A DNA stretch of 64,000 nucleotides from Gracilinanus agilis (Eukaryota). The DNA lies in the NCBI RefSeq assembly GCF_016433145.1, contig NC_058135.1, positions 106,927,860 through 106,991,859 of the forward strand, written 5' to 3'. Made by a program: the position numbers and the translations under genes. Below the pieces are notes generated by a model. It saw only the letters and a list, made by a program, of their open reading frames with translations, had not been told where the DNA came from and made no database searches. Below, in pieces: positions 14,757-45,062 of the stretch; within the stretch, counting starts at the first letter, position 1, and each line of letters begins with the position of its first letter.

Positions 14757-17700
14757 CAGTTGTTATGAAAAATATTTTAGTGAACTACAAGCTACAAGTT
14801 GATCTGGAAAAATTGGCCTAGAAATATTGTGGACTACAAATTGTTCTTTAAAAAAAAAGATCTAGGACCTCAGTGTATTACGAGCTATAAGTTATTATGT
14901 TAAAGAAGCTCTAGGAATTTAAAGGACAAGATACAAGTTGTTTGGGGTGGGGGCAGAAATTACAGGATTTTAATGGACTATAAACAACATATTGTTTTGA
15001 GAAAAAGAAAAGTTCTAAGATTTAACTGAACTATAAACTACAAATTTCGGGGCGGGGGGAGTCTATGATTTTAGTGGACTGAAAACTGCAACTTGTTTTT
15101 GGGTGGTGAAAAAGGTTGAGGAGCTAAGTGGGCCACAGGCTAAAGTTGTTCTGGAAAAAAATAGGTGGTTTTGGTGAACTAAAAAGCTACAAATTGCCTA
15201 GAAAAAAAAAAAGAAAAGAAAACAGCCTTGGATTTTAGTGGACTATAAGCTACAAGTTGTTCTGGATAATAAAAAGTCTAGGATTTCAGTAGACAATTCA
15301 GTGGTTACAAGTTGTCTTTAAAAAAAGTAGACAATCTAAGATTTTAGTGGATTAAAATTAAAATTTAAGATTTTGGTGAACTACTATCTACAAATTACTT
15401 GGGAAAAAAGTCTAGAATTTTAGTGGACTACAACCTAAAAATTGTTCTGAAAAGAAAAAAAAATTGTCTTGGGATTCAGTATATTACAAGTTATAAAATG
15501 TTTCAAAATAATAAGATCTAAGATCATGTTGGATTACCAGCTATCTTGAAAAAAAAAAGGGATCTAACATTTAATGCACTTCAAGCTACAAGTTATTCTA
15601 ATAAGAGGTTAAAAAAAGTAGAAAAAAAATTCAGGTTTTAATGTATTACAAGTTACATATTATTTGGGGGAAAAGAAGAAGTCTAGGGTTGTGTTTGACT
15701 ACAACCTACTAACTGTTCTGGAAAAAAGTCTACAAATTTAGTGGACTGCAATCTACATGTTGTTCTGGGTGATAAAAAAAAAAAAGCCTAGAATTTTAGT
15801 GGATAATTCAGTGGCTACAGAATGTCCTAAAAAGGGTGGGAAGATCCTGAGATTTTAGTGGGAAAAAAGCTACAATTTGTTCTGAGGGAACAAAAGGTCA
15901 AGAATTTTAGTAGACTACACACTCCAAGTTGTTCTGGAGAAAAAAAATTCTATTGAATTACAAGATATTCTGAAGACAATAAAAAATCTAGCACTAGAAA
16001 TTATTCTTAAAAAATGATGAAAAAAGGTCTAACATTTTCTTGGACTAGAAGTTGTTCAGAAAAATAAAGGAGATCTAGAATTTTAGAGGATGACAAGCTA
16101 CAAGTTGTTTGGGGAGAAAATTAGAATTTTAATGGACTAGAAGCCATAAGTTCTTCTAAAAAAAGGTGTAGACTTTTAGAAGGTTACAAGCTTCCAGTTG
16201 TTCTGGGGAGAAAAGCTCTAGTGAAATGCAACCTGTTCTGAGAATAAAAAAAAAAAAAAAAAAAAAAAAGGTTTAGCATTTTAGTGCATTACAAGTGATT
16301 CTTTAAAAAAAAAAGATGAAAAAAGTTATAAATTTTGTTGGACTACAAACTACTTTTAAAAAAAAAAACAGATCCAGGATTTTAATGCACTACAAGCTAC
16401 AAGTTGTGGATGACAACCTATAAATTATTCTGGGGAAAAAGATGGCTCCAATTTTGTACTCTACAAACTACAAGTTGTTGTGGAGAGAAAAAAAAAAAAA
16501 AGATGGTTTAGGGGGCATAAAACCCAAGTTACAAATTGCCCAAAAAAAAAAAAAACAAGTATAGGAATATAGTAGATCACAACCTAGAAATTATTTTAAA
16601 AAATGGCTCCAATTATTTTGGACTACAAACTACAAGTTGTTCAAGGAAGGATAGGTCTAGTGAATTGCAAGCTCTTCTGGAAAAAAATATTTTAGTTCAT
16701 TACAAGTTATTCTTTAAAAAAAGCTGAAAAAAAGGTATAAGATTTTGTTAGACTACAAACTGTTCAGTAATAAAAAGAGATCCAGGATTTTAATGCACTA
16801 TAAGCTACAAGTTTTTCTAGGAAAAAAAATAGGCCTCAGAGTTTGGCGGACTACAATCTATAAACTGCGTTCAAAAAAAGTCTAGAATTTTATTGGACTA
16901 CAACCTAAAAATTGTTCTGAAAAGAAAAAAAAATTGTCTTGGGTTTCAGTTAACAAGTTACAAACTGATTCAAAATAAAAAAGGTCAAAGATCTTGTTGG
17001 ACTACAAGTAATTTTGAAAAAAATATCTAACATTTTAATACACTTCAAGCTACAAGTTATTGTAAGAGGTAAAAAAAAAGTTGTGGAAAAAAATTCCAGG
17101 ATTTTAATGTACTACAAGCTACATATTGCTTGGGGAAAACAAAAAGTCTAGGATTGTACTAACCTACTAACTGTTCTGAAAAAAAAGTCTACAAATTTAG
17201 TGGACTACAATCTACATTTTGTTCTGAGTGATAAAAAATAAAAAGTCTAGAATTTCAGGGGAAAAATCAGTGAATACACATTGTCCTAAAAAGGATGGGA
17301 AGGTCCTGAGATTTTAGTGGAAAAAAAGCTACAATTTGTTGGTCAAGAGTTTTAGTAGACTACAAAATCTAAGGTGTTCTGGGTGAAAAAGTTCTAGTGA
17401 ATTACAAGCTTTTCTGAAGAAAACAAACAAAAAAATTTAGGATTTTAATGAATGAGAAGTTATTCTAAAAGAATGGTGAAAAAAGGTCTAGGATTTTTTG
17501 AAATAGAAGATATTCAGAAAAATAAAAAGATCTAGAATTTAAGTGGATGACAAGCTACAAGTTGTTTGGAGAAAAAGATTAGAATTTTAATGGACTAGAA
17601 GTCAAGTTCTTCTAAAAAAGGTCTAGAGCTTTAGTAGACTACAAGCTTCCAGTGGTTCTGGGGAGAAAAGGTCTAGTGAATTGCAACATGTTCTGAGGGA

Positions 17701-20700
17701 AAAAAAAAGGTCTAGCATCATAGTGCATTAAAGATCTAGCATCATAGTGCATTACAAGTGATTCTTTAAAAAAAGATGGAAAAATGCTAAGCATTTTGTT
17801 GGACTACAAACTATTCAGGAAAAATAAAACATCCNACAAGCTTCCAGTGGTTCTGGGGAGAAAAGGTCTAGTGAATTGCAACCTGTTCTGAGGGAAAAAA
17901 AAGATCTTGCATCATAGTGCATTAAAGATCTAGCATCATAGTGCATTACAAGTGATTCTTTAAAAAAAGATGGAAAAATGCTAAGCATTTTGTTGGACTA
18001 CAAACTATTCAGGAAAAATAAAACATCCAGGATTTTAATGCACTAGAATCTACAAGTTGTTGTGGTGGTGGTGGTGGGGTGGGTCGGGAATAGGTCTAGG
18101 ACTTTGGTGGACTACAGTATACAAATGGTTCTGAAAAGAAAAAAAAAGTCTTAGATTTCAGTGGAATACAAGTTACAAGGCATATTCAAAATAAAAAGGT
18201 CTAAAATATTCTTGGACTACCAGCTATTTTGGGGAAAAAAAAGATCTAACATTTTAATTCATTTCAAGCCACGAGTTTTTCTAATATGAAATAAAATTTT
18301 TTAGAAAAATGTTATCCTGGAAAAAATTCCCAGGATTTTAATAATTGTTTGGGAGAAAACAAAAGTTCTAGGCTTGTACTGAACTATCAACTACAAGTTG
18401 TTTTGGGGAGAAAAAAAAAGGTGGTTTGAGGGGACTAAAACTCAAGATACAAATTGCCTAAAAAAACAATCTAGGATTATAGTGGACTACAACCTAGAAA
18501 TTATCCTGAAAAACAAATTGGCTTCAATTGTAGTGGATTACAAATTACAAGTTGTTCTGGGTAGGAAAGGTCTAGTGAATTGCAAACTCTTCTGAAAAAA
18601 AACAAAAAAAGATGTAGGATTTTAGTGCATTACCAGTTATTCTGAAAAAAAAAAAGATGATAAAAAGCTCTAGGATTTTGTTAGACTACAAACTGTTCAG
18701 TAATAAAAAAGATATCCAAGATTTTAATGAACTACAAGCTACAAATTATTCTAAGAAAAAAATAGGTCTAGGAGTTTTGTGGACTACAATCTATAAACTG
18801 CCTTCAAAAAAAAAAAAAAGGCTAGAATTTCAGTGGACAAATCAGTGGTTACAGATTGTCCTAAAAAGGGAGGGAAGGTCCTGAGATTTTAGTGGAAAAA
18901 AAGCTACCATTTGTTCTGAGGGAACAAAAGGTCAAGAGTTTTAGTAGACTACAAATTCTAAGGTGTTCTGGGTGAAAAAGTTCTAGTGAATTGCAAACTA
19001 TTCTGAAGAAAACAAAAAAAATTTGGATTTTAATGCAGGAGAAGTTATTCTAAAAGAATGGTGAAAAAAAGGTCTAGGATTTTTTGAAATAGAAGATGTT
19101 CAGAAAAATAAAAAGATTTGGAATTTTAGTGAATGATAAGCTATAAGTTGTTTGGAGAAAAAATTAGAATTTTAATGGACTAGAAGTCACTAGTTCTTCT
19201 AAAAAAGGTCTAGAGCTTTAGTAGACTACAAGCTTCCAGTGGTTCTGGGGAGAAAAGGTCTAGTGAATTGCAACCTGTTCTGAGGGGAAAAAAAAGATCT
19301 AGCATCATAGTGCATTAAAGATCTAGCATCTTAGTGCATTACAAGTGATTCTTTAAAAAAAGATGGAAAAATGTCTAGCATTTTGTTGGACTACAAACTA
19401 TTCAGGAAAAATAAAAGATCCAGGATTTTAATGCACTAGAAACTACAAGTTGTTCTGGGGGTGGGGGGGTTTGGGGGGGAATAGGTCTAGGACTTTGCTG
19501 GACTACAGTATATAAATGGTTCTAAAAAAAAAGTCTTAGATTTCAGTGGAATACAAGTTATAAGGAATATTCAAAATAAAAAGGTCTAAAATATTCTTGG
19601 ACTACCAGCTATTTTGAAAAAAAAAAAGATCTAAGATTTTAATTCATTTCAAGCCATGAGTTTTTCTAATATGAAATAAAATTTTTTAGAAAAATGTTAT
19701 CCAGGAAAAAATTCCCAGGATTTTAATGTTTGTTTGGGAGAAAACAAAAGCTCTAGGATTGTACTGAACTACAAACTACAAGTTGTTTTGGGGATAAAAC
19801 AAAAAGGTGGTTTGAGGGGACTAAAACTCAAGTTACAAATTGCCTAAAAGAACAATCTAGGATTATAGTGGACTACAATCTAGAAATTATCCTAAAAAAA
19901 ATTGGCTCCAATTGTAGTGCATTACAAATTACAAGTTGTTTTGGGTAGGAAAGGTCTAGTGAATTGGAAGCTCTTCTGAAAAAAAAAAGATCTAGAATTT
20001 TAGTGCATTACAAGTTATTCTTTAAAAAAAGATGATAAAAAGCTCTAGGATTTTGTTAGACTACAAACTGTTCAGTAATAAAAAGAGATCCAGGATTTTA
20101 ATGCACTACAAGCTACAAGTTATTCTAGGAAAAAATAGGTCTAGGAGTCTGGTGGACTACAATCTATAAACTGCCTTCAAAAAAAAGTCTACAATTTTAG
20201 TGGACTACAATCTAAAAAATTGTTTTGAAAAGAAAAAAAAATTGTCTTGGATTTCAGTTGACGAGTTACAAACTGATTCAAAATAAATAGGTTGAAGAAT
20301 TTGTTGGACTACCAGTAATTTTGAAAAAAGAGAGATCTAACATTTTAATGCACTTCAAGATACAAGTTATTGTAAGAGGTAAAAAAATGTTGTAGGAAAA
20401 ATTGCATGATATTAATGTACTACAAGCTACATATTGCTTGGGGGGAACAAAAAATCTAGGATTATACTAACCTATTAATTGTTTAAAGAAAAGTCTACAA
20501 ATTTAGTGGACTACAATCTACATGTTGTTCTGCAGGATAAAAAAAAAAAGTCTAGAATTTCAGTGGACAATTCAGTGGCTACAGATTGTCCTAAAAAGGG
20601 TGGGAAGGTCCTGAGATTTTAGTGGGGAAAAAAAGCTACAATTTGTTCTGAGGAAACAAAAGGTCAAGAGTTTTAGTAGGCTACATAATCGAAGGTGTCC

Positions 20701-23700
20701 TGGGAGGAAAAGATCTAGTGAACTGCAAGCTATTCTGAAGAAAACAAAAAAAAATTTAGGATTTTAATGGAGGAGAAGTTATTCTAAAAGAATGGTGAAA
20801 AAAAGGTCTAGGATTTTTTGAAATAGAAGATGATCAGAAAAATAAAAAGATTTAGAATTTTAGTGGATGATAAGCTACAAGTTGTTTGGAGAAAAAAAAT
20901 AGAATTTTAATGGACTAGAAGTCACAAGTTCTTCTAAAATAGGTCTAGAGTTTTAGTAGACTACAAGCTTCCAGTGGTTCTGGGGAGAAAAGGTCTAGTG
21001 AATTGCAACCTGTTCTGAGGGAAAAAAAAAAAAAAGATCTAGCATTACAAGTGATACTTTAAAAAAAAAAAAAGATGGAAAAATATGAAGGATTTTGTTG
21101 GACTACAAACTATTCAGGGGAAAAAAAAAGATCCAGGATTGTAATGCACTAGAAGCTACAAGTTGTTTGGGGGGGGGGGTAAAAATAGGTCTAGGATTTT
21201 GGTGGACTACAATATACAAATGGTTCTGAAAAGAAAAAAAAAGTCTTAGATTTCAGTGGAATACAAGTTACAAGGCATATTCAAAATAAAAAGGTCTAAA
21301 ATATTCTTGTACTACCAGCTATTTTGAAAAAAAAAATCTAACATTTTAATTCATTTCAAGCCACGATTTTTTCTAATAAGAAATAAAATTTTTTAAAAAG
21401 TTATCCTGTAAATGTTTTCTGGATTTTAATGTTTGTTTGGGAGAAAAGAAAAGCTCTAAGATTGTACTGAACCACAAACTACAAGTTGTTCTGAGGAGGA
21501 AAGGTCTAGTGAATTGCAAGCTCTTCTGAAAGAAAAAAAAAGGTCTAGGATTTCAGTTCATTGTAAGTTATTCTTTAAAAAAAAAGATGAATAAAAGGTC
21601 TACGATTTTGTTAGACTACAATCTGTTAGTAATAAAAAGAGATCCAGGATTTTAATGCACTACAAGCTACAAGTCATTGTAGGGAAAAAATAGGTTTAGG
21701 AGTTTTGTGGACTACAAATCAATAAATTGCCTTTAAAAAAAATTCTAGGATTTTGGTGGACTACAATATACAAATTGTTCTGAAAAGAAAAAAAAGACTG
21801 TCTTGGATTTCAGTAGACTGCCAATTACAAACTATTTCAAAATAAAAATGTCTAAGTTCTTGTACTACTAGCTATTTTTTTTTGAAAAAAAAAAAGATAT
21901 AACAATTTAATTCACTACAAACCATGAGTTTTTCTAATAACTAAAAAAAAAGTTCTCCTGGAAAACATTTTCAGGATTTTAATGTACTAGAAATTACATA
22001 TTTTTTTGGGGGGAAAGAAAAGCTGTAGCATTGAATTGAACTAAAAACTACAAGTTGTTTTGGGGAGAAAAAAAGGTGGCTTCGGGGGACTAATACTGAG
22101 TTACAAATTGCCTAAAAAAATGTATCATTATAGTGGACTACAACCTAGAAATTATCCTGAAAAAAAAATTGGCTCCAATTGTAGTGGACTAGAAACTACA
22201 AGTTGTTCTGGATAGGAAAGGTCTAGTGAATTGCAAGCTCTTCTAAAAAAAAAAAAGATCTAGAATTTTAGTGCATTACCAGTTATTCTTAAAAAAAAAA
22301 AAGATGAAAAAAAGGTCTAAGATTTTGTAAGACTACAAAGTGTTCAGTAATAAAAAGATATCCAAGATTTTAATGCACTATAAGCTACAAGTTATTCTAG
22401 GAAAAAAAAATAGGTCTCAGAATTTGGTGGACTACAATCTAAAAATTGCCTTAAAAAAAGTCTAGAATTTTAGTAGACTACAACCTACAAAATTTTCTGG
22501 AAAAACAAATAGTATTTCTTTGGACTGAAAGCCTAAAGTTCTTTTAAAAACAGTCTAAAGTTTATGTGGACTACAACCTATAAGTTGATCTGGGAAGAAA
22601 AGGTCTAGTGGATTCCAAGCTGTTCTGAAAATAAAAAGGATTTCAGTGCTTTTTCAAGTTATTCTAAAAAAAGATGAAAAAAATGTCTAGGATTTTGTTG
22701 GACTGCATGCTATTCAGAAAAACAAAAAGATCTAGGATGTTAGTGCACTACAAATTACAAGTTGTTCTGGGGGGAAAGTTGGTCTAGGATTTTGGTGGAC
22801 TATACCTACAAATTTCCTGAAAAAAAAAAAAACAAAAAACAAAAACAACCACAAAACAGCTAGGATATTAGTGGACTGTAGTCCACAAAAATATCTGTTA
22901 TTTTGAAGCTGTTCAGGAAAAAAAAAGATCTTAGATTTAATACACTACAAGTTACAAGTTGTTCTGGGAGAAAAAAATGAGCCCAGGATTTTGGTAGATT
23001 ACAAACTAAAAAGTACTTAAAAAAAAAAAAAAGTTTAGAATTGTATTGAACTAGAATCTGCAAGTTGTTCTGAAAAGAAAAAAAAATCTTGGATTTCAGA
23101 GGACTCCAATCTATAAGCTGTTTTCAAAATTTAAAAAGTCTAAGATTTTGTTGGACTTCCAGCTATTTAAAAAAATCTAACATTTAATGCACTTCAATCT
23201 ACAAGTTACTCTAATAAGATGCTAAAAACAAAGTATAGGATTTTAGTGGACTACAACCTGTAAGCTGTTCTGAGGGGTGAAAGGTTTAGAAATTTTAGTT
23301 GCTTACAAGCTGTTACAAATAAAGTTCTAGGATTTTAGTTTACTACAGGCTACAATACAAGTTATTCTAAAAAAAAAGGTAAAAAAAGGTTTTAAAAGGT
23401 CAAGGATTTGGGGGGAGTACTTCCAAGCTGTTCAGGAAAAAAAAGAACTAGGATTTTAGCGTACTACAAGCTACACACTATGGATGAGAAAAAAAGGAAA
23501 AAAGTAAGAGAAGGAAAGGAAAGGAAAGGAAAGGAAAGGAAAGGAAAGGAAAGGAAAGAAAAGTTCTACAAAAAGCTCAGATTTTAGTGGACTACAAGCT
23601 ACAAATTATTATGGGACAAAAAGGGTCTGGGAATTCGGTGGACTATAAGCTCCAGGTTGTTTTTTTTTTGGGGGGGGGAGGTCTAAGATTTTAGTGGAGT

Positions 23701-24430
23701 ACAAGATATAAATTGTTCTTTTAAAAAATAGAGAAAGCTCTAAGGTTTTAGTGGACTACAAGGTGCAAATTGTCCTTTATAAAAAAAATCTCAGATTTTT
23801 GTGGACTACCAGGTGCAAATTGTCCTTTAAAAAAAAGGTCTAAGATTTTTGTGGACTACAAGGTGCAAATTGTTCTTTAAAAAAATCTAGGATTTTAGTG
23901 GACTACAAGGTGCAAATTGTTCTTTAAGAAAAAGGTCTAAGATTTTAGTGGACTACAAGGTGCAAATTGTCCTTTAAAAAAAAAAAGGTCTAAGATTTTA
24001 GTGGACTACAAGGTGCAAATTGTCCTTTAAAAAAAAAGGTCTAAGATTTTAGCGGACTACAAGGTGCAAATTGTCCTTTAAAAAAAAAAAGGTCTAAGAT
24101 TTTAGTGGACTATAAGGTGCAAATTGTTCTTTAAAAAAAAGGTCTAAGATTTTTGTGGACTACAGGGTGCAAATTGTCCTTTTAAAAAAATCTAGGATTT
24201 TTGTGGACTACAAGGTGCAAATTGTCCTTAAAAAAAAAAGGTCTAAGATTTTTGTGGATTACAAGGTGCAAATTGTTCTTTAAAAACAAATCTAGGATTT
24301 TAGTGGACTACAAGGTGCAAATTGTCCTTTAAAAAAAAGGTTTAAGATTTTTGTGTACTACAAGGTGCAAACTGTCCTTTAACAACAACAAAAAAAAGTC
24401 TCATATTTTAGTGGGCTATAGGCTACAAGT
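14757..24430. repeat. ~9.7 kb tandem array of a ~45-55 bp L3-derived monomer (about 180-200 copies, estimated from length)
   Basis: Consensus (A)nGGTCTAGGATTTTAGTGGACTACAAGCTACAAGTTGTTCT repeats throughout, with variable poly-A linkers. Confidence 0.97.
23511..23562. repeat. (GGAAA)n microsatellite inside the array
   Basis: About 10 AAGGA units. Confidence 0.95.
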
Positions 24431-25000
24431 CAGTCAGCAGTGAGATATGCAAGCCAAAAATTAATACTAACAGGCTTCATTAATGATGGCATAAATTCCA
24501 AGGATGGAGACATAATAATTCTCCTGTACTATATCCTAGTCCGATTTCATCTGGAGTACTGAGCTCTCTTCTGTGAGCCATAATTTAAGAAAAATATTGA
24601 TAAGTTTGAGAAAGTCCAAAGAAAGGCAACCAAAATGATAAAGAGTCTATTATGATACTTTAGTTCAAGTAACTGGAGATATCCAGCAAAAAAGTAGAAG
24701 AAATATGATAACTGCCTTAAGGTATATGAAAAGTTATCATTTAGAAGAAAAATTAACTTGTTCTTATTGACCTTTAAGTGCAGAATTAGGAGCAGTAGGG
24801 TAGAAGGTACAAAGAGGAACAATTAAATTTGATATGAGGGAAATTTTCCAAATAATCAGTGTAGGAACAAAAAATGGAACAGCAGCATTAATAATGGCTT
24901 GGAAGTGTTTAAGTAGTCCTTGGAAGTCTCTAAGTAGAAGCTGGATGAAGTGCTTTTTTTTTGCAAGGCTAAATGCTTCTAAATAAATGTTAACTATTAG
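24431..25000 (+). mobile_element. L3/CR1 LINE, 3' part resuming right after the array
   Basis: 24408-24458 translates LVGYRLQVSQQ*DMQAK (CR1 LVDxKLxMSQQC...AKKAN); CATCTGGAGTAC (HLEY) at ~24548; GAGAAAGTCCAAAGAAAGGCAACCAAAATG (E.VQR.ATKM). Confidence 0.88.
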
Positions 25001-25844
25001 TAATAGCAACATGATAATACTGGAGCCTTATTTCATATTTGAGTTGGACTAGAGAGCCACTGAAATCCCTTTTAATTTTCAAATTCTGTGATTCTGTAAT
25101 TCTATCATGTCTGTTTCCAGATTTCCTATATAATTTTGACCTCTCCTGCAAATATCCCTTCTACAGGCTTTCCCCATGCCTAGAACAGACTGTCTCATTA
25201 TTACCTACTAAAAATCTCTCTTTTCTTTCAAAGTCCAAATCAAATATGACTTCTTCTATGAAGCCTTCCTTGATTTGCCCAAATATAAAAGCCTCTACTC
25301 TTCCTTGAAAGCCTCAGAGCACTCTGTCCTCCCTTAGCCTTTAATCATTTTCTAATTGCAATGATTTAAAAAAAATTATTACTACTGTTCTCAGTCCCTA
25401 CTACTTAAGTAAGTATAAAGCCCCTTGGGGGAATCGGAGACTTCTTTTTGCCCCCCTATTTTATTTCCCCATCCCTTAACCCAGAGCCTTGCATAGAACC
25501 CAGTAACTTCATTCATGTTTGTTAAAATGAATTAGATTGAGTTGTCCAGTGTAAGAAGGCAGTGATGCCCTCAGGGGCAATTGAATTGTGAAAGGTTGCT
25601 TGCCCCTACACTAACTGGATAGCCCCCAGTCTGGTTTTTTTTTCCTTTTGAGCTCTTGCTTCTGAATTTATAGTTTTTCTGTCTCTTCTCACCATGTCAA
25701 ACCGTGAGACATTAGTTCTTGCTGTATGCCTCCCTCTAGTCCCCCTTCTCATTTGCTGCTCCTAATATATTGTACACTGGAAAAACAGATACTGAAGCTT
25801 GTTAGATCTATGTTTTAAATAAGTCTAAAAAGATTATAACAGAG

Positions 25845-26176
25845 GGACTCTGAGACTCTCTTCATGAATAAGGTGCATGAACTCTATTTCATTTGTTTTG
25901 GCTGGTTATAAGCCTTTTCTTGTTTATTTTCCTGTGTTCTGGATAATAGAAATTATTGGAAAAGTAATCTCGAGATGAGCAAAGTGTTGTTCTTTTCAAA
26001 ACCTACTCTCTTAGATCTTGCAATTCATGGCAAACTGGTGCATGTATTTCAAACATACATAAATATATATGTAAAACATGTACACATATAATATACATAA
26101 AGTTAAATTAAATTAAAGTATTATATGAAAGCCAAAGTTAAGCATGTTTTGAGAGTGAATAGTTGAGGTAATCAGG
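25845..26176 (+). repeat. ~330 bp dispersed duplication, copy 1
   Basis: Aligns by eye to 27500-27816 (shared ATAAGGTGCATGAACTCTATTTCATTTGTTTTGGCTGGTTAT...CATGTTTTGAGAGTG). Confidence 0.92.
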
Positions 26177-27499
26177 TAGAATAATTCTGGGTACTTGGGT
26201 TTATACTGAGAAAGAGGAAGCTTTTGGTTCATTAATTTATCTGAGAAATTTTCCTGGATGATGTGTGATACTTTAAAACAGAGTTTTTTTCATCTTTTTT
26301 TTGGTATTAGGTGTCCCTTTGGCAGTTTAATGAAATCTATGTACCTCTTCACAGAATAATGTTTGGAAAAGCATAAAATAAAACATATAGAATTACAAAT
26401 AAAATTAATTATATTGAAATCCAGTTATCAATTAAAAATGTTCTAGGACCCTACATTAAGAACTCTTGGCTTAAAATATGGACAGCAAATTCCTTATCAG
26501 GTTAGGTATGAGAGAATGGTGTTTTAGTCATATTATTTTGTAGAAGACTTAGAGGTAAAATGCTGAAGGAATCACAGAATCACAAACTCAGAGCTAGATG
26601 AGAAATTAGAAATAATCCACTTTAAAACACAATTTACAAATAAGGAAAATTCAGATTAAAGAGAGTAAAGTGTTTTGCCTGAAATCCAGGAGGGAATATA
26701 GTGGCAGAACTGAGAATTGAACTCAAAAAACTCAGACTCCAGCTATTGTGTTCTTTTCTAACTAAACCATGGGGTATCAAGGTCCAAAAGAGAGACAAAC
26801 TTACTTATATAACTCTCCTATATATTAAGAAGTAGTTGCACACTGCCTCCATACCCCTATGTTGCAGTCATTTTCCTCTAACCTACCCCTTCAAGCCACC
26901 AAGGAGCTATCTCATCTAACATCTTTTCCCTACTATCCTTTTTTCTGGAACAACAGGCACTCTCTCCTTGATAATTTAGTTGATTTCACCTTCAGTAATT
27001 TCTTTTCACACAGACACAGAGACTCTAGTAACAAACAGTCTTCCTTCTTTCTTTTATAACTAAATCTACTCCAGTAATCACCAGAAAATATTTTATCCTC
27101 TTTTCTCAGTTGTTCCATTTGTGATTCAAAAACAAACAAAAAGCATGCACATATGCATGCAAACATGTGCACAGTCCTATTCATAAGTGATAAACTAAGT
27201 GGCAGCAATGTTACTTTACTAAGAAAAAGAAGAGAAAAACTATTAAGTTATGAAGTGAAATCAGATATGATAAAGAGCCAGGGTTATCAATTTCTAAAGC
27301 CCTTAAAAGGGCTTGACAGAAGACTCCCCAAATCTTAATTTTTTAAAAAAAAATCTGTTCATTAAAAAGCTTCTGTTTAAGTGCAAACAGTGAAAAAAAA
27401 TTCTAATCAAAAAATTATTCAATTTTTTGATTAGTTTAATTTTTAGAACAGCCAGATTATCTATATTTTTTACTATAATATCATTCTATGTTACTAATC

Positions 27500-27816
27500 A
27501 GAGGGATTGAAACTCTCCTCATAAGGTGCATGAACTCTATTTCATTTGTTTTGGCTGGTTATGAGCCTTTTCTTGTTTATTTTCCTGAGTTCTGAATAAC
27601 AGAAATTATTAGAAAAGTAATCTTGATAGAAGCAAGTTGTTGCTGTTTACAAAATCTGCTCTCTAAGATCTCACAATGTATGACAAACTGATTTTTGTAT
27701 TTCAAACACATATAAATATATAAAACACATACACATATATAACAAAGTTAAATTAAAATATCATATGAAAGCCAAAGGTAAACATGTTTTGAGAGTGGAT
27801 AGTTGAGATAATCATG
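27500..27816 (+). repeat. ~330 bp dispersed duplication, copy 2
   Basis: Same orientation as copy 1, about 1.65 kb downstream. Confidence 0.92.
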
Positions 27817-29663
27817 ACTAAAGGGGTTTTGTTGATTAGCCCTTGGATACTAATTTATCATTTTTTTTGTCCTGTGAAAAATCTGTCTCTTTATCCAAAT
27901 AACTGATTTATAATTGAATATGTAAAAACACAGCTCATTTGTAGCTTGGAACTGCCTTTTAATGACCTATCCCTTGCCCTCAGTTAGATTATAATCTAAC
28001 TAGAGCTGTTATTCTCTAACCTTCATGAAATGAGTTTTTCTCTTCCACATTTCTTGTCCCTATTCAGAACATAGCTTGGATCAAACTTTCTTGTCTGCAC
28101 ACAAACACACACAATCCATGAGAATACAAAGTATGGAAATGAAGTTTTATAAGGAGAAACCCCCCAAGATATTAATTTCTCCAGCAAGGTACCAAAGTTC
28201 TCAGATATTTTGGAGAGAACTGGTCCTTTAAAAATCTGCTGGAAACAATAAAATAGCACATACCCAGTTCAGTCATCGTGTTCTGGCCATTTTAGTGATC
28301 CCTTCTGAGCTATTAGAAATGTCATGTAGAAGCATTGATTTTCATGTCTGTGAAACAAATGAAGGGTATACTTTTAAAAACAAATAAAACCTCACAGACT
28401 AATTCCAAAGATTAATGTTTGATGAATAGCACGAAGTGCTGAACATAGTAATAACACAATAATGTAAGGCTCAAGACTAGCAATTGACTCCCCTGAGGTT
28501 AGAGTCAAGCTTTGGTGAGTCACCATTACATTGGGCACTAAATGAAGATGATTTTTTTTTAACTTTTAGGAAGTAAACTTTACTTCTAGACTTGGCTGAT
28601 AAGTTTCTTAGGGTGATGTTATATACAAGCAAACTGGCTAATTCTCAAAGACATCATTCTTCTAATTGTCCATCTTAGGAAAACAACCTATAGTCAGGAA
28701 GACTTGGCTTCAAGACTTGTTTCTGATATATACCCCTTGCCTAAATGACTTTGCTAGGAGCTTCACCTCTAAGGGAGCTGGGGCAACTCTCTAAGACTGA
28801 GTTGCAGAGAAATTACAGATCTACATTGGTAGAGTGATGAAGCTGATAAAATCACTATTCCAGAAATAAAACCCCTCCTCAAAACAAACAAAAAACAAAC
28901 AAACAAAACACCGTTAAATTAATTTCTAAGTGTAGAGGAAGTGGACTTGATGGTCTCTCCACTGGTCATCTTGTTATCTAGGCATCTCTCTTTGCCTGTG
29001 ACAAATTCTCACCAGCCCTTGATCCTCTCCATTCCCTGTGCAAGATATATTTTGTATTAAAGCAGTAAAAAACAATAATATCATTATGATGACCAGATTT
29101 CATCCCCAATGTGTTCATATAGCCACTGAAAAATAAAGGGGATTTTAAAAATATGAATAACCTGTATCCTATGATTAGAAAAATATTTTTTTAAAAGTGG
29201 TTGTTGTTTTGTGAGTTTAATTCTAATAGATAACAGGGCAGCTTCCAAGATTTGTAAAGCTCCTAACTGTCTAAAAGTTGGGGATCAGTGTTATCAAAGT
29301 ACAAACATCTTTTGGATTTTTTCTTCAGGGTTACAAAACCAGACTGAGTCAGTTTTCTAAGACATTTTGTATTCCAATTATATATGGATACTTACATGAT
29401 GAATCTAAAAGGATATGAACGTTTGTGAAATGTGAATATGTATACTTGGTCACCCCAAAGGTTCTCTGAGTATTTTTTGGACTCAGAGAAACTTTTATAG
29501 GAGAGACAAAACAGAGAAGTCAGGGTGGAAATGGAACTTTCAGGACAGAATGACTCATGGAAACACAGTGAATGTTTATGGAACAACATTAAACAATTAC
29601 AGTGCAGTGTCCATCCTCTTTGGTGGGATAATACACTTGCTAAAAACACAAAGGAAATGGCTC

Positions 29664-29696
<33 letters not shown>

Positions 29697-30159
29697 TCCT
29701 GTACTCACCTCTGCAGGTAGGGCAGTGCTTAGGATGGGACAGCAGCAGTAGGCAATAGGGCATTGTCCTGGTGGTCTGTGGGCTAATCTGCATTTCTGTG
29801 CACTTTCTGTGAGGGGGAGAAGGAAGGCAACTGGGAAGTGTGCCCAGGTGCACTTGGGATCCTGAAAATTGTCCCCCTTTATTTTGGGAAGTCTTTGGAC
29901 CCACCACTAATCACATATTAGGCTTGTTTTCTCGGTCTCCTCCTAAGGTATTCATTCATTTAAAGGTAATAAAGTATTTGTAGCTGCTGCCTGGGGATCT
30001 TTTCCATTATCTATAGAGAACCTACAGGTTACCAGAGCCTAATGGCCACTTCTGATTAAACTCTCGAAGGGTGTTGAACCCAGACCAGCTAGCAACACCC
30101 GCTAGGGTTTTTCCAGTCCGCGGCCGTATCCAAACATTCACGGCCCACACTTTACCTGG

Positions 30160-32730
30160 GTGCCCCCAGCCTCACTTGAACAGAGAGCCAAGGAGAGCGT
30201 GCGTGCAAGGGAGCACCCAGCTTCACGAGCGCGCACACACACCAAGGAAGTGAGGAAAAGAGAATCAAAAAAGACCCCAGGCTCACACACTCAATGAAAG
30301 TAAAGTCAGAGTAAATAAAGTCCCGGGCCTCACTTACAGAGTAAGGAGGAGAGTCAGAGACCCCAGACTCACGCACGCGCGCGCGCACACGCACACGCGC
30401 ACGCTCAAAGGCGAGAGTAAGAGCAGGAACACACACCCCCTACCCCCACCCCCAGACTCACAAAGAAAAAGCGAAGCAGAGCCCCCATCCTCAAAGAGGT
30501 CGAGCGCCCCGCTTCATAAATTAATGCGGGAAAAGCTCCCCGGCCTCACAAACATAGAGAGATAGCCCGCGCCCAGGAGAGACCCTAGCTTCAAGCTCAT
30601 TGAGTATGCAGACAAGAGACCCCAGCCTCAGATGAAAAGATAAAGAGCGAGAACAGGAGAAATGCCCCAACCTCACAAGCAAATAAAAAGATCTAGAGCA
30701 AGAGAGAGACCCCGGCCTCAAAAGCACAGAAAACAAATAAGGAAAACAGTAAAGACCTCAGCTTCATGTACACAGATGAAGAACGCAAGCAGAAGACAGA
30801 CCCCAGCCTCACAAGCTAATAAAAAGAGTGAGAGCGAGAGCGAGAGCAGGAGAAAAACCCCGGCTTCAGGAGCACCGAAGGAAAAAAAAAAATGTATAGG
30901 GAAACAGACCCCAACCGCACCGCCCCCCCCCCCCCACACACACACACAGACGAAGAGTGCAAGCAGTAGACCCCAGCCTCACCTACAGAGGAAAAAAATA
31001 GGAGAGACCTCAATCTCATACATAGGTTAAGAGAGGAGGTAACAGACCCCGGGTCTTACTCGCAGAGGGGAGAAAAATAGGGAGACCCTAGCTTCATACA
31101 TACGGGGGCGGGGGGGATAAAAAACAAACACGAGAGACCCTACCCTCACACACAGAGAAAGGAGGGGAAAAAAAACAACTAGAGAGACCCCTGCCTCATT
31201 TGTCCACATAAAGAGTGAGAACGGGAGAGAGACCCCCAGCTTCACACGCACCGGGGAAAAATAAAAATAAAAAATAAAAACAGTTAAGACCCTCAGATTC
31301 ACAAGTAAAGAAAAAAATGTTTATACATATATATTTAAACAGGAGAGACCCCAACTTCACCCGCTACAAAAAAATAAAGAGCGAGAACTGGCAAAAAGAC
31401 CCCAATGTCATACACAGATAAAGAAGAAAAACAAGACAGACCCCAGCTTCACCACACACAGAGGGTGAGAGCCCACCACCTCATAAACAAACAGGGAGAG
31501 AGCCCCCAGCCTCACAAACACGGAAAGCTAGCGCTAAACACGCGCGCCGGGGAAAGCCCCCACCTCTGGCGCATAGAATTGGCAAGAGAGAGACCCCAGC
31601 CTCACACGCCCAGGTAAAGAGTGAAAACAGAGACCCCAGACTCACACTCAGATAAAGAAGGGAAGTAGGAGAAAGACCCGAGTCTCATGCACCCAGAGAA
31701 ATCGATCAAGAGAGACCCCATCCCCACACGCCGAGCGAAATAGAGAAAACAAGAGACCCCCCCAACCCCATATGCCCAGAAAAACCAAGAAACCAAAAGA
31801 GACCCCAGCCCCACACGCACAGATAAGAATCGAGACTAAGAGAGACCCCAGCCTCAAACAAACAAAGCGCGAAAACAAGAAAACAGGAAAGACCCCAGAC
31901 TCTCACGCACGGAGAAACAGCAAAAAAGCAGGAAAGCGACCCTAACCTCACTCGGAGAGACCCCAGCCTCACACGAACAAAGAGCCAAAGCGAGAGCACA
32001 GGAAAGACCCCAGTCTCCCACACAAAGAGCGAGAGCGAGCTGACAGGAGAGACCCTAGCCTCACGCACAAAAAGCGACGGCTGCACGGCAGGAAGAAGAG
32101 ACCCCAGACTCACACGCACAGAGAAAGAGCCAAAGCAGGGGACCCCAGCCTCACAAGCACAAAAAGCGGGAGCGGGAGCGCGAAAAAGCGTGAAGAGGGT
32201 AAAAAAAGACCCCAGCCTCACACGGACAAAGAGGAAAAGCGGGAAGATAAGAGAAAGAGACCCCAGATTCACACGCGCAGCGAAAAAAAAAAAATCAGAA
32301 GACCCCAGCCTCACGCACAAAAAGCGAGAATGAGCGAGCGAGAGACCCCGGCCTCGGTCGCAGAGAACCCAAGAGCAGAAGAGAGACCCCAGCCTCATAT
32401 GCAAAGGGAAATAGCGAGGGACCCCGGGCACAAGCACAAAGAGCTATCTAGCGAGAGGGCAGAGCCCCCAGTCTCCCAGGCAGGGAGAAAAAGCCAGCGA
32501 GATCAGGGGAAGAGACCCCAACCTCACCCTCCCCCTTCCCGAGAGAAAAGGAGAGCGGGTGAAAGACCCCAGTCTCCTAGATACAGAAAAAGATCGAGAA
32601 TGATATGGAAAAAAACCCTGGCCTCATTGACACAAAGAGTGAGAGCGACGGAGGAGAGCCCCCAGCCTCAATGGAACCAAAGAGCGAGAGCGGGAGAAAT
32701 CCCCCCCCCCTTCCGCTGCCGCCCCAACCT
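30160..32730. repeat. GC/CpG-rich array of ~55 copies of GAGACCCCAGCCTCAC with variable purine-rich spacers (Rsx 5'-repeat-like)
   Basis: Core motif every ~46 bp on average, counted by eye. On the minus strand the core reads GAGGC-TGGG-GTCTC and can form a hairpin. Many CpGs are retained. Confidence 0.95.
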
Positions 32731-33223
32731 CCCTATCTGAGGAAAAGGCACAAAACACACATTACTTAGTTGAAAACGTGAAGTTTAATATCCCTAAAAG
32801 GGTAGGTAGAGGAAAACCTCACCCCCCCCCAAAAAAAAGAGAGAAGACAGAAGGGCAAATAATAGGGACAGACTACAAAGAGTTAAGTGTTGATAGTGGC
32901 AGGTGGGGCACAGGAGATATGTAATTGAGGATACTTTGGAGGGTCAGGGGCTTGGGTGGGAGAGATGGCCAAGAAAACGTTTCTAAATCCCTGTATTGAA
33001 AAGACAGGGCCAAGAGTTAGGCAAAGAACCAACTAGAAGCCGAGAAGCCAGAGGCTGTTAAAAGTTTACTTTGTTAGAAAAAAAGAAAAAGAAAACTAAA
33101 TCCCCTAGTTTAAAACTTCAATTCGAGTTGAGCTCTGGCATTATTTGTAAGTCAGATCGAAGATAAATGATTGAAACTCTACAGGGACATGATTTTTCAC
33201 TCTCTAAACTTTTCCCGCCTCGC

Positions 33224-33420
33224 CTGAGGACACAAGTGGAAAAGTTTCACTGATGGATGATGGCTCTTGTCTCGCTCTTAGTCTCTGCTGCTCCCCTGCG
33301 GCTGCCAATGAGAACAACACGAAAAGTTTTACTTTTCTTGCTTTTTTTTCTCTCTTGCATTGACGCAAATTATTTTTTTTTACCTTGGGCGTCAATCCCT
33401 TTTCCTGCGTAATGCTTTCT
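33224..33420 (-). promoter_or_regulatory. Candidate promoter / 5' regulatory region
   Basis: CCAAT at 33305-33309; inverted pair ATTGACGC (33359-33366) and GCGTCAAT (33389-33396); third related site GCGTAAT at ~33407; CpG cluster; strong minus-strand acceptor CTTTTCCACTTGTGTCCTCAG ending at 33224. Confidence 0.5.
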
Positions 33421-33554
33421 CGGTTGAAATAAAATAGATATGAAACTTTTTCTTTTTTTTTGGCTCCTATGTCAAGAAATAATGATTGGTAAGTAATTGG
33501 AATGTGGTTGTTCTTTTCCCTAAACCCATCTACCCCCGTGTGTGTTTGTCTCTC

Positions 33555-33763
33555 AGTATGTATCTGAATACTAATACAGATCTCTATATACAGATAGAGA
33601 TGCTCCCCATTTTTCAAACCAATCTGTGTGTCTGTGAATACTAATATAGATCTCGATATACAGATATATAGATGCTCCCCATTCTTCAAACCAATTTGTA
33701 TGTATGTGAACACTAATATAGATCTCTATATACAGATCTACGTGCTCCCCATTCTTCAAACCA
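33555..33763. repeat. ~70 bp x3 minisatellite
   Basis: GAA(T/C)ACTAATA(C/T)AGATCTC...ATACAGAT...TGCTCCCCATT.TTCAAACCA at 33566, 33636 and 33708. Confidence 0.95.
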
Positions 33764-33829
33764 GTGAACATAAAGGGGGGAATCAGGAATTTATGCAAAG
33801 GAGCACACTCAGAGAACACTCAAGGTCAT

Positions 33830-34470
33830 AGACAGTCATCTATCCCCTGGACTATTGCAATGACTAGTTTCCCTCCTTTTAATCCTGCTCCTCCAACCCC
33901 ATATACAGCCCAATTCATCCTGCTTTAAGACATGCATGAGACCATACCATTGACACCTGATTTCCTTTAGGTTAAAAAGCAAACTCTAACCTGGCATTTT
34001 AAAACCCATTAAAAAGTTTTTTAAAACAACAATATGGTTTCCTCTTTCCAACTTTAGTTCATACTTCTCCCCCAAAACACTCTAGGCTTTGGTCAAACTA
34101 TTTGTTGTTCTGTGATCTCAACATACATTTCCCCAACTCTTTGTATTTGTACAAGCCATCGTCCCCACTTGGAACTTATAGTATGTTCATCTGTATTGGA
34201 ACACTTTCCCTCTTTTAAGCTTCATTTCAGGTGACAATTCATTTCCATGAACTCATCAGCCACAAATGTTCTATCCTTCCTTCAATTTCCCTAGAATAAT
34301 TTGTCTGATTTGCTCTTTTATTATATCTGAATTATATTAATCTGTGTACATATATCCCTCCCAATAGAATGTAACTCCATAAAAGCAAATACTTGCCATC
34401 TTAGATAATGGAATCTTTAGTGCCTAGCACAGTGTTTTTATACTTGGTAGTACTTAAGAAATGCTGCTAG
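33830..34470 (+). mobile_element. L2 3' fragment
   Basis: CTGGACTATTGCAAT... start and L2/MIR-type tail GTGCCTAGCACAGTG...GTACTTAAGAAATGCT. Confidence 0.65.
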
Positions 34471-39519: not shown

Positions 39520-40700
39520 CAGTTTACTCAATCAACAAGCTATGGGGGCATAAAGGGGGGAGAAAAACAAACTCTGCTCTTGAGCTCACAGTCTAATGAG
39601 GAGAGGATATAGAAACAGCTATGTGCAAACAACGGAGTGCAGGATGATCTGGAGACAGGGAAGGAGAAAATCATTAGCATTAAGACTGAATAGGAAAACT
39701 TTTTTTTTCGCAGGAAGTGGGATTTTAGCTGAGCATTGAAAAAAGCTGGGGAAGCCAGGAAGAACAACAAAGGGAGGAGAGAAGAAGCAAGGGACGAGAG
39801 AATGGAGGAAAGAACAAAGAGGAAAGGAGAGAAGAGAGAAGAATAGAGTTGAGGAAACACGGGAGAACAAAGGAGAGAAGAGGAAAAGAGGAGAGAACAG
39901 AGGAGTGGAGAAGAAAGGAGAACAAAGAATAGGAGAGGAGGAGAAGAGGAAATAAGAGAAGAAGAGAGGAGATAACAGAAAAGGAGAACTGAGGAGAGGA
40001 GAATAAAGGAGAGAAGAGGGAGAATAGAACAGAACAGAGAACAGAGGAGAGGATAACAGAAGAAAGAGAAAAAAGAAGAGAACAGAGGAAGAGAGAAGAG
40101 AAGAGGAGGGGAGAATAAGACAGAACGGGAGAGAGAACAGAAGAGAGAAGAAAAGAAAAGAGGACAGGAGAAAAGAAAAAAAGAGAGGAGAGAGAACAGA
40201 GGAAGAAGAGGAGAGAAGAAAAGAGAAGAGAAGAGAAGAGAAGAGAAGAGAAGAGAAGAGAAGAGAAGAGAAGAGAAGAGAAGAGAGGTGCACAGAAGGG
40301 AGGGGAGTAAAGGAGGGAACTTCAGGCATAGAGTATATCCAGGGGCAATACATAGGAGGAACAAGGAAGCCAATGTCACTGGATAGAAGAGAATGGGAAA
40401 ATATGGATGGGATCCAATAAAGTGCAAAAACTCTGAAAAGGTAGGGAAGAGTCAGGCTTATGAAGGATTTTAAAAGTCAAGCAAAAATTTTTAGATTCTG
40501 GAGATAACAGTGATTGGGGTTTACTGAAAGGGAAGGGGAACACTGTAAGACCTGTGTTTTAGGAAGATCATTTTGACAGCTGAGAGGAGAAAGGAGCAGT
40601 ATGGGGAAGAAGCAAGGACACCAACTAGAAAGTACAGTTGTTAAGAAGGTAGAATTGACAGTCCTTGGCAACAGATCGAATTTGTGGCATGACACCTAGT
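39520..40700 (-). mobile_element. L2 fragment split by a purine-rich tract
   Basis: CAATCAACAAGC...CTCTTGAGCTCACAGTCTAATG on the left and GTGTTTTAGGAAGATCA on the right are typical antisense L2 3' sequence. Confidence 0.6.
39771..40287. repeat. ~520 bp polypurine (GAA/GAG/AAGAG) low-complexity tract
   Basis: Almost entirely A/G; ends in perfect (AAGAG)n at ~40221-40285. Confidence 0.97.

Positions 40701-44975: not shown

Positions 44976-45062
<87 letters not shown>
44976..45062. repeat. (GA)n microsatellite
   Basis: Near-perfect GA run. Confidence 0.98.

What the first reader, a model, noticed from the sequence alone, without database searches (positions are those of the whole stretch)
30160..32730. 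Hairpin motif array with strand-specific G-U/A-U variation and free spacers
The core GAGGC-UGGG-GUCUC (minus strand) forms a 5-bp stem with a tetraloop and one G-U pair. Variants at ~31675, ~32005 and ~32565 read GAGAC-(UCGG/UGGG)-GUCU, turning that G-U into A-U. On the plus strand the same position is an A-C mismatch, which favours the minus strand as the folded RNA. The core is conserved across ~55 copies while the 25-45 nt spacers vary freely (CU/U-rich in the RNA). This looks like a multivalent protein-binding scaffold rather than a neutral minisatellite.
Basis: partly seen in the sequence, partly recalled or inferred. Interest (0 to 1): 0.75.

Follow-up and report, generated by a model that had tools for sequence, protein, structure and literature searches.

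The report
Repeat-built CpG island, hairpin unsupported
The 55-copy repeat array is real and probably forms most of the first exon of a spliced non-coding RNA in an opossum-like genome, but the proposed little hairpin shows no sign of being selected or of folding in context, so this looks like an ordinary tandem-repeat CpG island next to a non-coding RNA promoter.

Summary
The array is real. There are 55 head-to-tail units (median 46 nt) at 30161-32733, all in one orientation and found nowhere else in the window. The consensus core can form the 5-bp/tetraloop hairpin on the minus strand, and the named A-U variants exist.

The hairpin reading fails every test I could run:
- 83.3% of stem cells pair, against 83.4% after column shuffling.
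- 41 cells are broken and 3 are compensated on both sides.
- RNAalifold predicts no pairs.
- In 314-nt context the stem has a mean probability of 0.02.
- Fold z-scores are about -0.7 on both strands.
- A 5-bp hairpin turns up in 8-32% of shuffled cores or units.
- The A-U variants and the opposing A.C variants each sit in one half of the array, which suggests few events spread by duplication.

Other findings:
- The spacers are not free; they share ancestry.
- The array is the window's only CpG island (o/e 0.60, against 0.10 elsewhere).
- It lies 0.6 kb from a promoter-like site. Contigs of a related organism stop at about 33350-33366 and at a consensus minus-strand splice donor (29709).
- It is not Rsx repeat 1.

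Earlier notes from this scan cover the same window (Rsx-like reading; intron of a non-coding gene).

Verdict: a tandem-direct-repeat CpG island of the Airn type. Interest is modest.

The parts
30161..32733 (-). Degenerate tandem array of 55 units (median 46 nt). Each unit has a 15-18 nt GC-rich core (+ strand AGACCCCAGCCTCAC; minus-strand RNA GUGAGGCUGGGGUCU) and a purine-rich (+) / CU-rich (-) spacer.
   Evidence: TRF sees only pieces with periods 31, 45 and 115
31958..31972 (-). Example of a unit with a perfect consensus core. Six such units exist: 30798, 30968, 31591, 31958, 32207, 32300.
31674..31688 (-). A-U variant of the G.U pair (GTCTC class). The other members are at 32005, 32463 and 32564. 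All four lie in the right half of the array.
30212..30226 (-). Example of the GCTTC class, which gives A.C on the minus strand and G.U on the plus strand. Seven members: 30212, 30580, 30753, 30855, 31083, 31231, 31438, six of them in the left half of the array and one (31438) just inside the right half.
30001..33750 (.). The only CpG-rich block of the 64-kb window. The array alone has GC 0.523, CpG o/e 0.60 and 105 CpGs, 96 of them in spacers. The rest of the window has GC 0.343 and o/e 0.10.
32734..33366 (-). Non-repetitive 5' part of the putative first exon. The piece 32973-33366 is the part best conserved with the related organism (0-1.6% substitutions).
33350..33500 (-). Putative promoter and start site of the minus-strand RNA. 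It has two CCAAT boxes (about 33476-33500), TGACG sites and an A-rich TATA-like run (33373-33385). Contigs from three runs of three studies end at 33350-33366. This is inferred, not shown.
30150..30158 (-). CAG|GTAAAG 5'-splice-site-like word right after the last core on the minus strand. It is a possible end of exon 1. It is a motif only.
29703..29942 (-). Exon-like piece ending in a consensus donor AG|GTGAGT (exon end 29709). The relative's contigs cover 29708-29934, and one of them runs on for 157 letters that do not lie on the stretch.

Best explanation
The stretch is an old, degenerate tandem-direct-repeat array that makes up a 2.6-kb CpG island. It sits directly downstream of a promoter-like site and is probably transcribed from the minus strand, as about 80% of a first exon of more than 3 kb of a spliced non-coding RNA.

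The 5-bp hairpin is a by-product of the ancestral unit's sequence. It is not a selected or stably formed structure.

What is kept across units is a linear word (minus strand UGAG...GGGG, plus strand CCCC...CUCA), together with the overall organisation: unmethylated CpG-rich repeats, no poly(A) signals in the sense direction, and many 5'-splice-site-like and CU-rich words.

The most likely way it works is the way tandem direct repeats work in the CpG islands of macro non-coding RNAs such as Airn. At the DNA and transcription level, it would keep the promoter-proximal region unmethylated and favour productive, unterminated elongation of the RNA. Any protein binding would go through single-stranded G-run and CU-rich motifs, not through hairpins.

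Shown: the array, the absence of structural signal, and the CpG-island status. Inferred: the strand, the start site, the exon structure and any function.
For: - Array reality.
- No covariation.
- No thermodynamic signal. Isolated 14-mers form at least 4 designated pairs in 23 of 49 units, but the in-context probability is 0.019. Fold z-scores are -0.61 and -0.10 for 300 nt. The mean z is -0.74 on the minus strand and -0.78 on the plus strand over 24 windows.
- The hairpin is not beyond chance: 8% of shuffled 20-nt cores and 32% of shuffled units have one.
- The most conserved columns are the loop G's and the UGAG, not the stem as such. There are 3 changes in 147 cells at C3-5, against 31 in 147 at C6/9/10.
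- CpG island.
- Minus-strand transcript. Contigs of small runs of a related organism cover 31133-32653 and 32973-33366 and stop there, while a DNA run continues to 33618. Contigs also end at the consensus donor at 29709|29708.
- U1/PAS asymmetry: 24 GTRAG and 0 AATAAA on the minus strand, against 7 and 7 on the plus strand.
- G>C and T>A on the minus strand.
- Published analogue: the Airn CpG island lies immediately downstream of its start site and carries tandem direct repeats that affect transcript length and promoter methylation (PMC3291542). The 5' end of Xist has antiterminator activity (PMC7544216).
Against: - The runs that cover the array are labelled only 'RNA?' and could be ChIP or another enriched DNA library. 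One of them (X1) is clearly a proximity-ligation DNA library (GATC|GATC joint).
- Contigs cannot show strand.
- No contig covers the left half of the array (30161-31130) or 32654-32972.
- A coherent plus-strand model exists: an acceptor-like TTTTTCCAG at 30121 and an AATAAA at 33428.
- No methylation, CAGE or binding data were available.
- Divergence from the relative is 2.0-7.5% in the array. That is similar to 5.6% just upstream of the putative start and 7.7-8.9% at 29708-29934, so nothing shows purifying selection on the array itself.
Confidence: 0.55

Rival explanations
1. A functionally neutral minisatellite-like array. It happens to lie inside an unmethylated, transcribed promoter-proximal domain. 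Its core looks conserved only because the purine-rich, low-complexity spacers decay faster by slippage, and because a few variants were spread by duplication.
For: - Divergence between organisms in the array (2.0-7.5%) is no lower than in its neighbours, and it is 3-5 times that of the unique 5' segment.
- Differences are not significantly depleted in cores (6 of 25 vs 35% expected, p = 0.17).
- Spacers contain A-runs, (AG)n and (CG/CA)n tracts, and most listed indels fall there.
- Variant classes are clustered by array half.
Against: - All 55 units keep a recognisable core, with a near-invariant CCC/GGG, despite about 25-45% divergence elsewhere.
- There is no lag dependence and no sign of recent homogenisation.
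- The right half is colinear with the relative, so the array is not turning over fast.
- CpG retention needs long-term protection from methylation.
Confidence: 0.3
2. One reading: each unit forms a GAGGC-UGGG-GUCUC hairpin on the minus-strand RNA, and the array is a scaffold of about 55 structured protein-binding sites.
For: - The consensus hairpin has dG -3.9 kcal/mol.
- The minus strand has 204 of 245 pairable cells, against 160 on the plus strand.
- 23 of 49 isolated 14-mers fold into it.
- The minus strand is probably the RNA.
Against: - No covariation, and pairing equals the shuffle expectation.
- RNAalifold gives 0 pairs.
- The in-context probability is 0.019.
- z-scores are equal on both strands.
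- 14 of 49 isolated cores do not fold at all.
- The A.C-creating GCTTC class has 7 members.
- A hairpin of this size is expected by chance in 8-32% of shuffles.
Confidence: 0.05
3. The plus strand is the RNA: a terminal exon from the acceptor-like site at 30121 to the AATAAA at 33428. [quoted passage not shown]
For: - The most conserved columns are a C-run.
- There are 81 CCCC words on the plus strand.
- The acceptor and the poly(A) signal are present.
- There is a published link between C-rich repeats and hnRNPK in Xist and Rsx (PMC6633197).
Against: - Seven AATAAA signals lie inside the array on the plus strand.
- The contig end at 29708 fits a minus-strand donor and no plus-strand acceptor.
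- Contig ends at 33350-33366 have no poly(A) signal upstream on the plus strand.
- A CpG island as a terminal exon is unusual.
Confidence: 0.1

Closest known systems
Tandem direct repeats in the CpG island just downstream of the Airn macro non-coding RNA promoter (also Kcnq1ot1-type imprint control elements); PMC3291542
   Same: The CpG island lies downstream of the start site rather than around it. Tandem direct repeats fill the island and are part of the transcript. [quoted passage not shown]
   Different: Here the array is 2.6 kb with 55 units, against 692 bp deleted in Airn. No imprinting or methylation data exist for this locus. The start site is inferred. There is no sequence similarity.
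Xist A-repeat (7.5-8.5 GC-rich 26-nt cores separated by U/A-rich linkers near the 5' end); PMC6917512, PMC7544216
   Same: A GC-rich conserved core alternates with U-rich, poorly conserved linkers. The array starts a few hundred nt from the start site. In Xist too, an intra-repeat hairpin was first proposed from energy minimisation and later questioned.
   Different: There are 55 units, not about 8. The core is shorter and of unrelated sequence. There is no stable tetraloop fold, no covariation and no Rfam match. Whether SPEN binds is unknown. The host is a marsupial, where Xist does not exist.
Rsx repeat domains (marsupial X-inactivation RNA); PMC6633197, PMC11112854
   Same: A marsupial-type genome; a repeat-rich non-coding RNA; G- and C-run motifs as in Rsx repeat 1 and pyrimidine runs as in repeat 4.
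   Different: None of the seven published Rsx ChIRP probes matches the window (best 4-7 mismatches of 19-21). Rsx repeat 1 is 13 kb, and nearly all of the 27-kb RNA is repeat. Here the exon ends after at most 3.7 kb.
PNCTR and other short-tandem-repeat RNAs with dense PTBP1 motifs; PMC6224606
   Same: A high density of YUCUYY words on the putative RNA strand (24.8 per kb, three times the shuffle expectation).
   Different: The motif density comes from one word next to each core (GUCUCUCC). Neither binding nor a nuclear body has been shown.
Classical GC-rich minisatellite
   Same: Unit length of 10-100 bp, head-to-tail arrangement, strand asymmetry in purines and pyrimidines, and a conserved core with variable remainder.
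   Different: The array is colinear with a related organism over at least 1.3 kb, with no sign of recent homogenisation. It is therefore not hypervariable in the usual sense.

Membership tests
Structured RNA repeat (conserved hairpin array) | Base pairs maintained by compensatory change above expectation | tested here: not met
   83.3% paired vs 83.4% shuffled; covariation 0.210 vs 0.204; 3 double changes vs 41 broken cells. My own shuffle gave 204 observed vs 204.2 expected.
Structured RNA repeat (conserved hairpin array) | Consensus structure predicted from the alignment | tested here: not met
   RNAalifold on 49 cores gives 0 pairs and energy 0.
Structured RNA repeat (conserved hairpin array) | Structure forms in sequence context and is more stable than shuffles | tested here: not met
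   Mean pair probability is 0.019 in 314-nt context. z-scores are -0.61 and -0.10. The mean is -0.74 and -0.78 on the two strands.
Rsx | Sequence of repeat 1 and other parts as targeted by published ChIRP probes | tested here: not met
   Best 4-7 mismatches of 19-21 nt anywhere in the 64 kb, on both strands. Caveat: the probes are for Monodelphis domestica, and the window's species is coded.
Rsx | About 27-30 kb RNA, nearly all of it tandem repeat, with a 13-kb repeat 1 | tested here: not met
   The array is 2.6 kb. Donor sites lie at 30156 and 29709, and sequence beyond is non-repetitive (PMC6633197).
Rsx | X-linked, female-specific expression from the inactive X | not testable with these tools
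   No chromosome assignment or sexed expression data were available. An earlier scan note calls the gene 'apparently autosomal'; I did not check this.
Tandem-direct-repeat CpG island of a macro non-coding RNA (Airn type) | CpG island by the usual criteria | tested here: met
   2573 nt, GC 0.523, CpG o/e 0.60; the rest of the window is 0.343 / 0.10.
Tandem-direct-repeat CpG island of a macro non-coding RNA (Airn type) | Tandem direct repeats inside the island | tested here: met
   55 units tile the island.
Tandem-direct-repeat CpG island of a macro non-coding RNA (Airn type) | Island lies immediately downstream of the transcription start and is transcribed | tested here: inconclusive
   Contig ends at 33350-33366 in three runs, promoter-like motifs upstream, and contigs over 31133-32653. 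However, the kind of run is uncertain and the strand is not shown.
Tandem-direct-repeat CpG island of a macro non-coding RNA (Airn type) | Allele-specific methylation / imprint control | not testable with these tools
   No methylation data.
Xist A-repeat-like silencing module | Conserved GC-rich core plus U-rich linkers near the 5' end | tested here: met
   Core conservation. Linkers are U 45%, C 28% on the minus strand. The array starts about 0.63 kb from the putative start.
Xist A-repeat-like silencing module | Sequence or profile similarity to described families | tested here: not met
   No Rfam match at gathering scores over the window, nor at E<=1 in 29000-34000.
Xist A-repeat-like silencing module | SPEN binding and gene silencing | not testable with these tools
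   Needs CLIP and a deletion.
Coding minisatellite | Unit lengths keep the reading frame; one long ORF; known domain | tested here: not met
   24 of 55 unit lengths are multiples of three. The longest ORF is 243 aa. No Pfam match.

The most novel reading that the evidence does not exclude
The array is the working 5' module of an unstudied didelphid macro non-coding RNA, a marsupial counterpart of the Xist A-repeat or the Airn repeats. About 55 units each join a 5'-splice-site-like GUGAG, a G-run and a PTBP1-type CU tract. Together they would load U1 snRNP, hnRNP H/F and PTBP1, hold the RNA on chromatin, suppress premature termination, and perhaps mediate allele-specific silencing in cis.
Probability: 0.1. 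Interest if true: 0.7.

Novelty: new member of a known kind. Interest (0 to 1): 0.3.

Why it matters
If the array mattered for the RNA, it would be a second marsupial example, besides Rsx, of a repeat-built 5' module in a long non-coding RNA. It would also offer a natural test of whether such modules work through organisation rather than sequence.

As things stand, the useful result is negative. A tidy-looking hairpin with a G.U/A-U 'covariation' in a tandem array is what one ancestral unit plus duplication produces. Copies of a repeat are not independent evidence for structure.

Tried and rejected
- Rsx identity: published ChIRP probes do not match. The Rsx paper itself (PMC3484893) is not held, and the k-mer paper has no supplements held.
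- Known RNA family: no Rfam match at gathering scores or at E<=1.
- Literature search for the core word: 0 papers.
- Coding repeat: no frame conservation and no Pfam match.
- G-quadruplex array: only 2 canonical motifs on the minus strand, because the G-runs are about 45 nt apart.
- The 799-nt 'skip' 31707>32507 in run X1, considered as a deletion allele or an intron. Rejected: the joined form reads GATC|GATC, a proximity-ligation junction between two GATC sites. That run is therefore DNA and gives no evidence of expression.
- The joint 31163>31586 in X3. Rejected as a mis-lay between similar units, because the loose end matches 31251-31280.
- Pseudo-5'-splice-site reading of every core: only 21 of 49 cores have GTRAG, so it is kept only as part of the novel case.
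- Structure in the conserved unique 5' segment: z = -0.49.
- Look-alikes in the scan's own notes by sequence: blank, which per the operators means nothing.
- Energies computed for forced non-canonical pairs are unreliable and were replaced by free folding.
Full report
**What is there.**
Reading 29900-33000 shows a purine-rich stretch on the + strand, punctuated every 45 nt or so by a C-rich word. The 15-mer AGACCCCAGCCTCAC has 42 matches at up to 3 mismatches, against 0.71 expected from shuffles. All are on the + strand and all lie between 30161 and 32671. With up to 4 mismatches there are 49. A profile built from these finds six more degenerate copies (31042, 31291, 31552, 31752, 32417, 32722), and only chance-level scores elsewhere in the window.

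The 55 units tile 30161-32733. Unit length is 21-89 nt, with a median of 46. TRF reports only fragments with periods 31, 45 and 115, because the units are 25-45% diverged. Spacers are A 45, G 28, C 19, T 8% on the + strand, so they are U/C-rich on the minus strand.

**The hairpin as a consensus feature.**
On the minus strand the consensus 14-mer folds into the stated 5-bp stem and tetraloop with one G.U (dG -3.9 kcal/mol). On the plus strand that position is A.C. The units at 31674, 32005 and 32564 carry A-U there.

A hairpin of at least 5 bp with at most one G.U and a 3-8 nt loop occurs on one strand or the other in 32% of shuffled 45-nt units and in 8% of shuffled 20-nt cores. Its presence in one ancestral unit is therefore unremarkable.

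**The hairpin as a selected feature.**
Across 49 units, 204 of 245 stem cells pair on the minus strand (150 Watson-Crick, 54 G.U) and 160 pair on the plus strand. Dealing the 3' letters out anew among units gives 204.2 and 159.4. The dedicated tool agrees:
- 83.3% paired, against 83.4% shuffled (307 of 500 shuffles at least as high).
- Covariation score 0.210, against 0.204.
- 3 cells changed on both sides and 32 on one side, against 41 unpaired.

RNAalifold predicts no pair at all.

The minus-strand excess of pairable cells comes from three sources:
- the consensus G.U, which is one ancestral state counted 27 times;
- a G/A ambiguity at the outermost pair, where the core meets the purine-rich spacer;
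- G>A changes at one position.

The opposite class, C>T at core position 10, gives A.C on the minus strand in 7 units. Six of these lie in the left half of the array and one (31438) just inside the right half. The four A-U units all lie in the right half. This clustering is what a few mutations spread by local duplication would give, so the copies are not independent observations.

**Thermodynamics.**
Taken alone, 23 of 49 minus-strand 14-mers form at least four of the designated pairs, and 14 do not fold at all. Within 314 nt of context the three central pairs have a mean probability of 0.019, with only one unit above 0.5. The G-runs pair with the CU-rich spacers instead.

A 300-nt piece folds with z = -0.61 on the minus strand and -0.10 on the plus strand. 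Over 24 windows of 150 nt the mean z is -0.74 and -0.78, so there is no strand-specific structural signal. Rfam has no match at gathering scores or at E<=1.

**What is conserved instead.**
The least variable columns are the run of three C's (G's on the minus strand), which sits mostly in the proposed loop, and CTCA (UGAG). There are 3 changes in 147 cells at C3-5, against 31 in 147 at the other three C's (p = 2e-7). The caveat is that counts are copies, not events.

Conservation continues outside the stem, into CAC and about 10 nt of the spacer (50-78% consensus frequency). Spacers are recognisably homologous: the best-partner score is 0.333, against 0.183 +/- 0.009 for shuffled spacers. There is no dependence on distance, hence no recent homogenisation. 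So 'free spacers' is an overstatement. The second refutation criterion (homogenisation that also covers the spacers) is not met either: the core really is better kept than the rest of the unit.

**Setting.**
The window has 34% GC and a CpG o/e of 0.10 outside this block. The array has GC 0.523, o/e 0.60 and 105 CpGs, 96 of them in spacers. It is the only CpG island in 64 kb, which implies long-term protection from germline methylation.

On the minus strand, upstream of the array, there are two CCAAT boxes, TGACG sites and an A-rich TATA-like run at 33373-33385.

**Reads.**
The window's own organism is coded C. A related organism, A, holds parts of the stretch. Run X1 has 2 Gb of contigs and a joint that reads GATC|GATC between the GATC sites at 31704 and 32501. 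It is therefore a proximity-ligation DNA library, not RNA, and the '799-nt skip' is a ligation product.

Three small runs from three other studies (59-103 Mb of contigs, 'RNA?') hold contigs over 31133-32653 and over 32973-33366. They stop at 33350-33366, whereas the DNA run continues to 33618. One of them also holds contigs over 29708-29934. Those contigs end exactly at a consensus minus-strand donor, AG|GTGAGT, at 29709|29708, and one record has 157 further letters that do not lie on the stretch. A weaker donor-like word, CAG|GTAAAG, follows the last core at 30156.

The minus strand has 24 GTRAG words and no AATAAA inside the array. The plus strand has 7 of each. The minus strand also shows G>C and T>A.

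I take the minus strand as the RNA strand with about 80-85% confidence. On that reading the array is most of a first exon that starts near 33360. None of this is proof: contigs carry no strand, and the small runs might be ChIP-type libraries.

**Constraint between organisms.**
Substitution differences between organism A and the window:

| Region | Substitutions |
|---|---|
| Array pieces | 2.0-7.5% |
| 32973-33366 | 0-1.6% |
| 33367-33618 | about 5.6% |
| 29708-29934 | 7.7-8.9% |

Of 25 listed differences inside the array, 6 fall in the 35% of sequence that is core (p = 0.17). The table was truncated, so this is a weak test.

The right half of the array, nearer the putative start, has better cores than the left half (1.67 vs 2.45 mismatches, p = 0.03). 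It is also the only part that could be laid on the relative. Nothing here shows purifying selection on the array's sequence. The unique 5' segment is the better-conserved element.

**Not Rsx.**
A note from this scan reads 14757-33420 as an Rsx-like RNA. Another report places the neighbouring 9.7-kb array in an intron of an apparently autosomal non-coding gene.

I tested the seven published Rsx ChIRP probes (PMC11112854, Additional file 1). The best matches have 4-7 mismatches of 19-21 nt, which is chance level, whereas Rsx repeat 1 is 13 kb of one motif (PMC6633197). The exon here also ends after at most 3.7 kb. The probes are for Monodelphis domestica and the window's species is coded, so the exclusion is strong but not absolute.

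**Comparison with what is known.**
The closest described thing is the tandem-direct-repeat CpG island that lies immediately downstream of the Airn start site. Its repeats are on the transcript, affect its length and help keep the promoter unmethylated. Such repeats are said to show organisational but not sequence conservation (PMC3291542).

The Xist A-repeat shares the layout of a GC-rich core plus U-rich linkers near the 5' end. It also shares a history: an intra-repeat hairpin was proposed from energy minimisation and later disputed (PMC6917512). The 5' end of Xist has antiterminator activity (PMC7544216).

The density of YUCUYY words (67 vs 21.6 +/- 4.4 in shuffles) recalls PTBP1-binding repeat RNAs such as PNCTR (PMC6224606).

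Membership in any of these families is not shown. The only family features met are the CpG-island criteria, the tandem repeats inside the island, and the core/linker layout.

**Verdict.**
The structural interpretation is not supported. The strand call is probably right, for other reasons. The scaffold idea remains untested.

The most likely description is a transcribed tandem-direct-repeat CpG island at the 5' end of a spliced non-coding RNA, which is a new member of a known kind. Interest 0.3.

Noticed in passing
window 30001-33750: This is the only CpG island of the 64-kb window (array GC 0.523, CpG o/e 0.60, against 0.343 and 0.10 elsewhere). 96 of the 105 CpGs sit in the spacers, at semi-conserved CACGCAC and AGCGAG words.
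   Followed up: yes
window 32973-33366: A non-repetitive segment between the putative start site and the array. It differs from the related organism by only 0-1.6%, several times less than the array or either flank. No Rfam match and no unusual fold (z = -0.49).
   Followed up: partly
window 29703-29942 (minus strand): An exon-like piece ending in a consensus AG|GTGAGT donor at 29709|29708, where the relative's contigs stop. A 28-nt T run (A on the + strand, 29664-29691) follows in the putative intron.
   Followed up: partly
window 31704-31707 and 32501-32504: Run X1 joins these two GATC sites as GATC|GATC. It is therefore a Hi-C-type DNA library mislabelled as possible RNA, and its coverage says nothing about expression.
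   Followed up: yes
window 33556-33763: A 72-nt tandem repeat, 2.9 copies at 87% identity, lies 0.2-0.4 kb upstream of the putative minus-strand start site.
   Followed up: no
window 33147-33152 and 33490-33495 (plus strand): Two GTAAGT words on the plus strand flank the promoter-like region. A divergent plus-strand transcript from the same promoter is possible.
   Followed up: no
window 39816-40288 and 44976-45062: Long AG-rich low-complexity tracts (GAGAAGAG-like, about 470 nt) and a (GA)44 run lie downstream on the + strand.
   Followed up: no
window 30370-30404 and 30920-30950: (CG/CA)n and poly-C/(CA)n microsatellites are embedded in two spacers. They account for the longest units (89 and 62 nt).
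   Followed up: no
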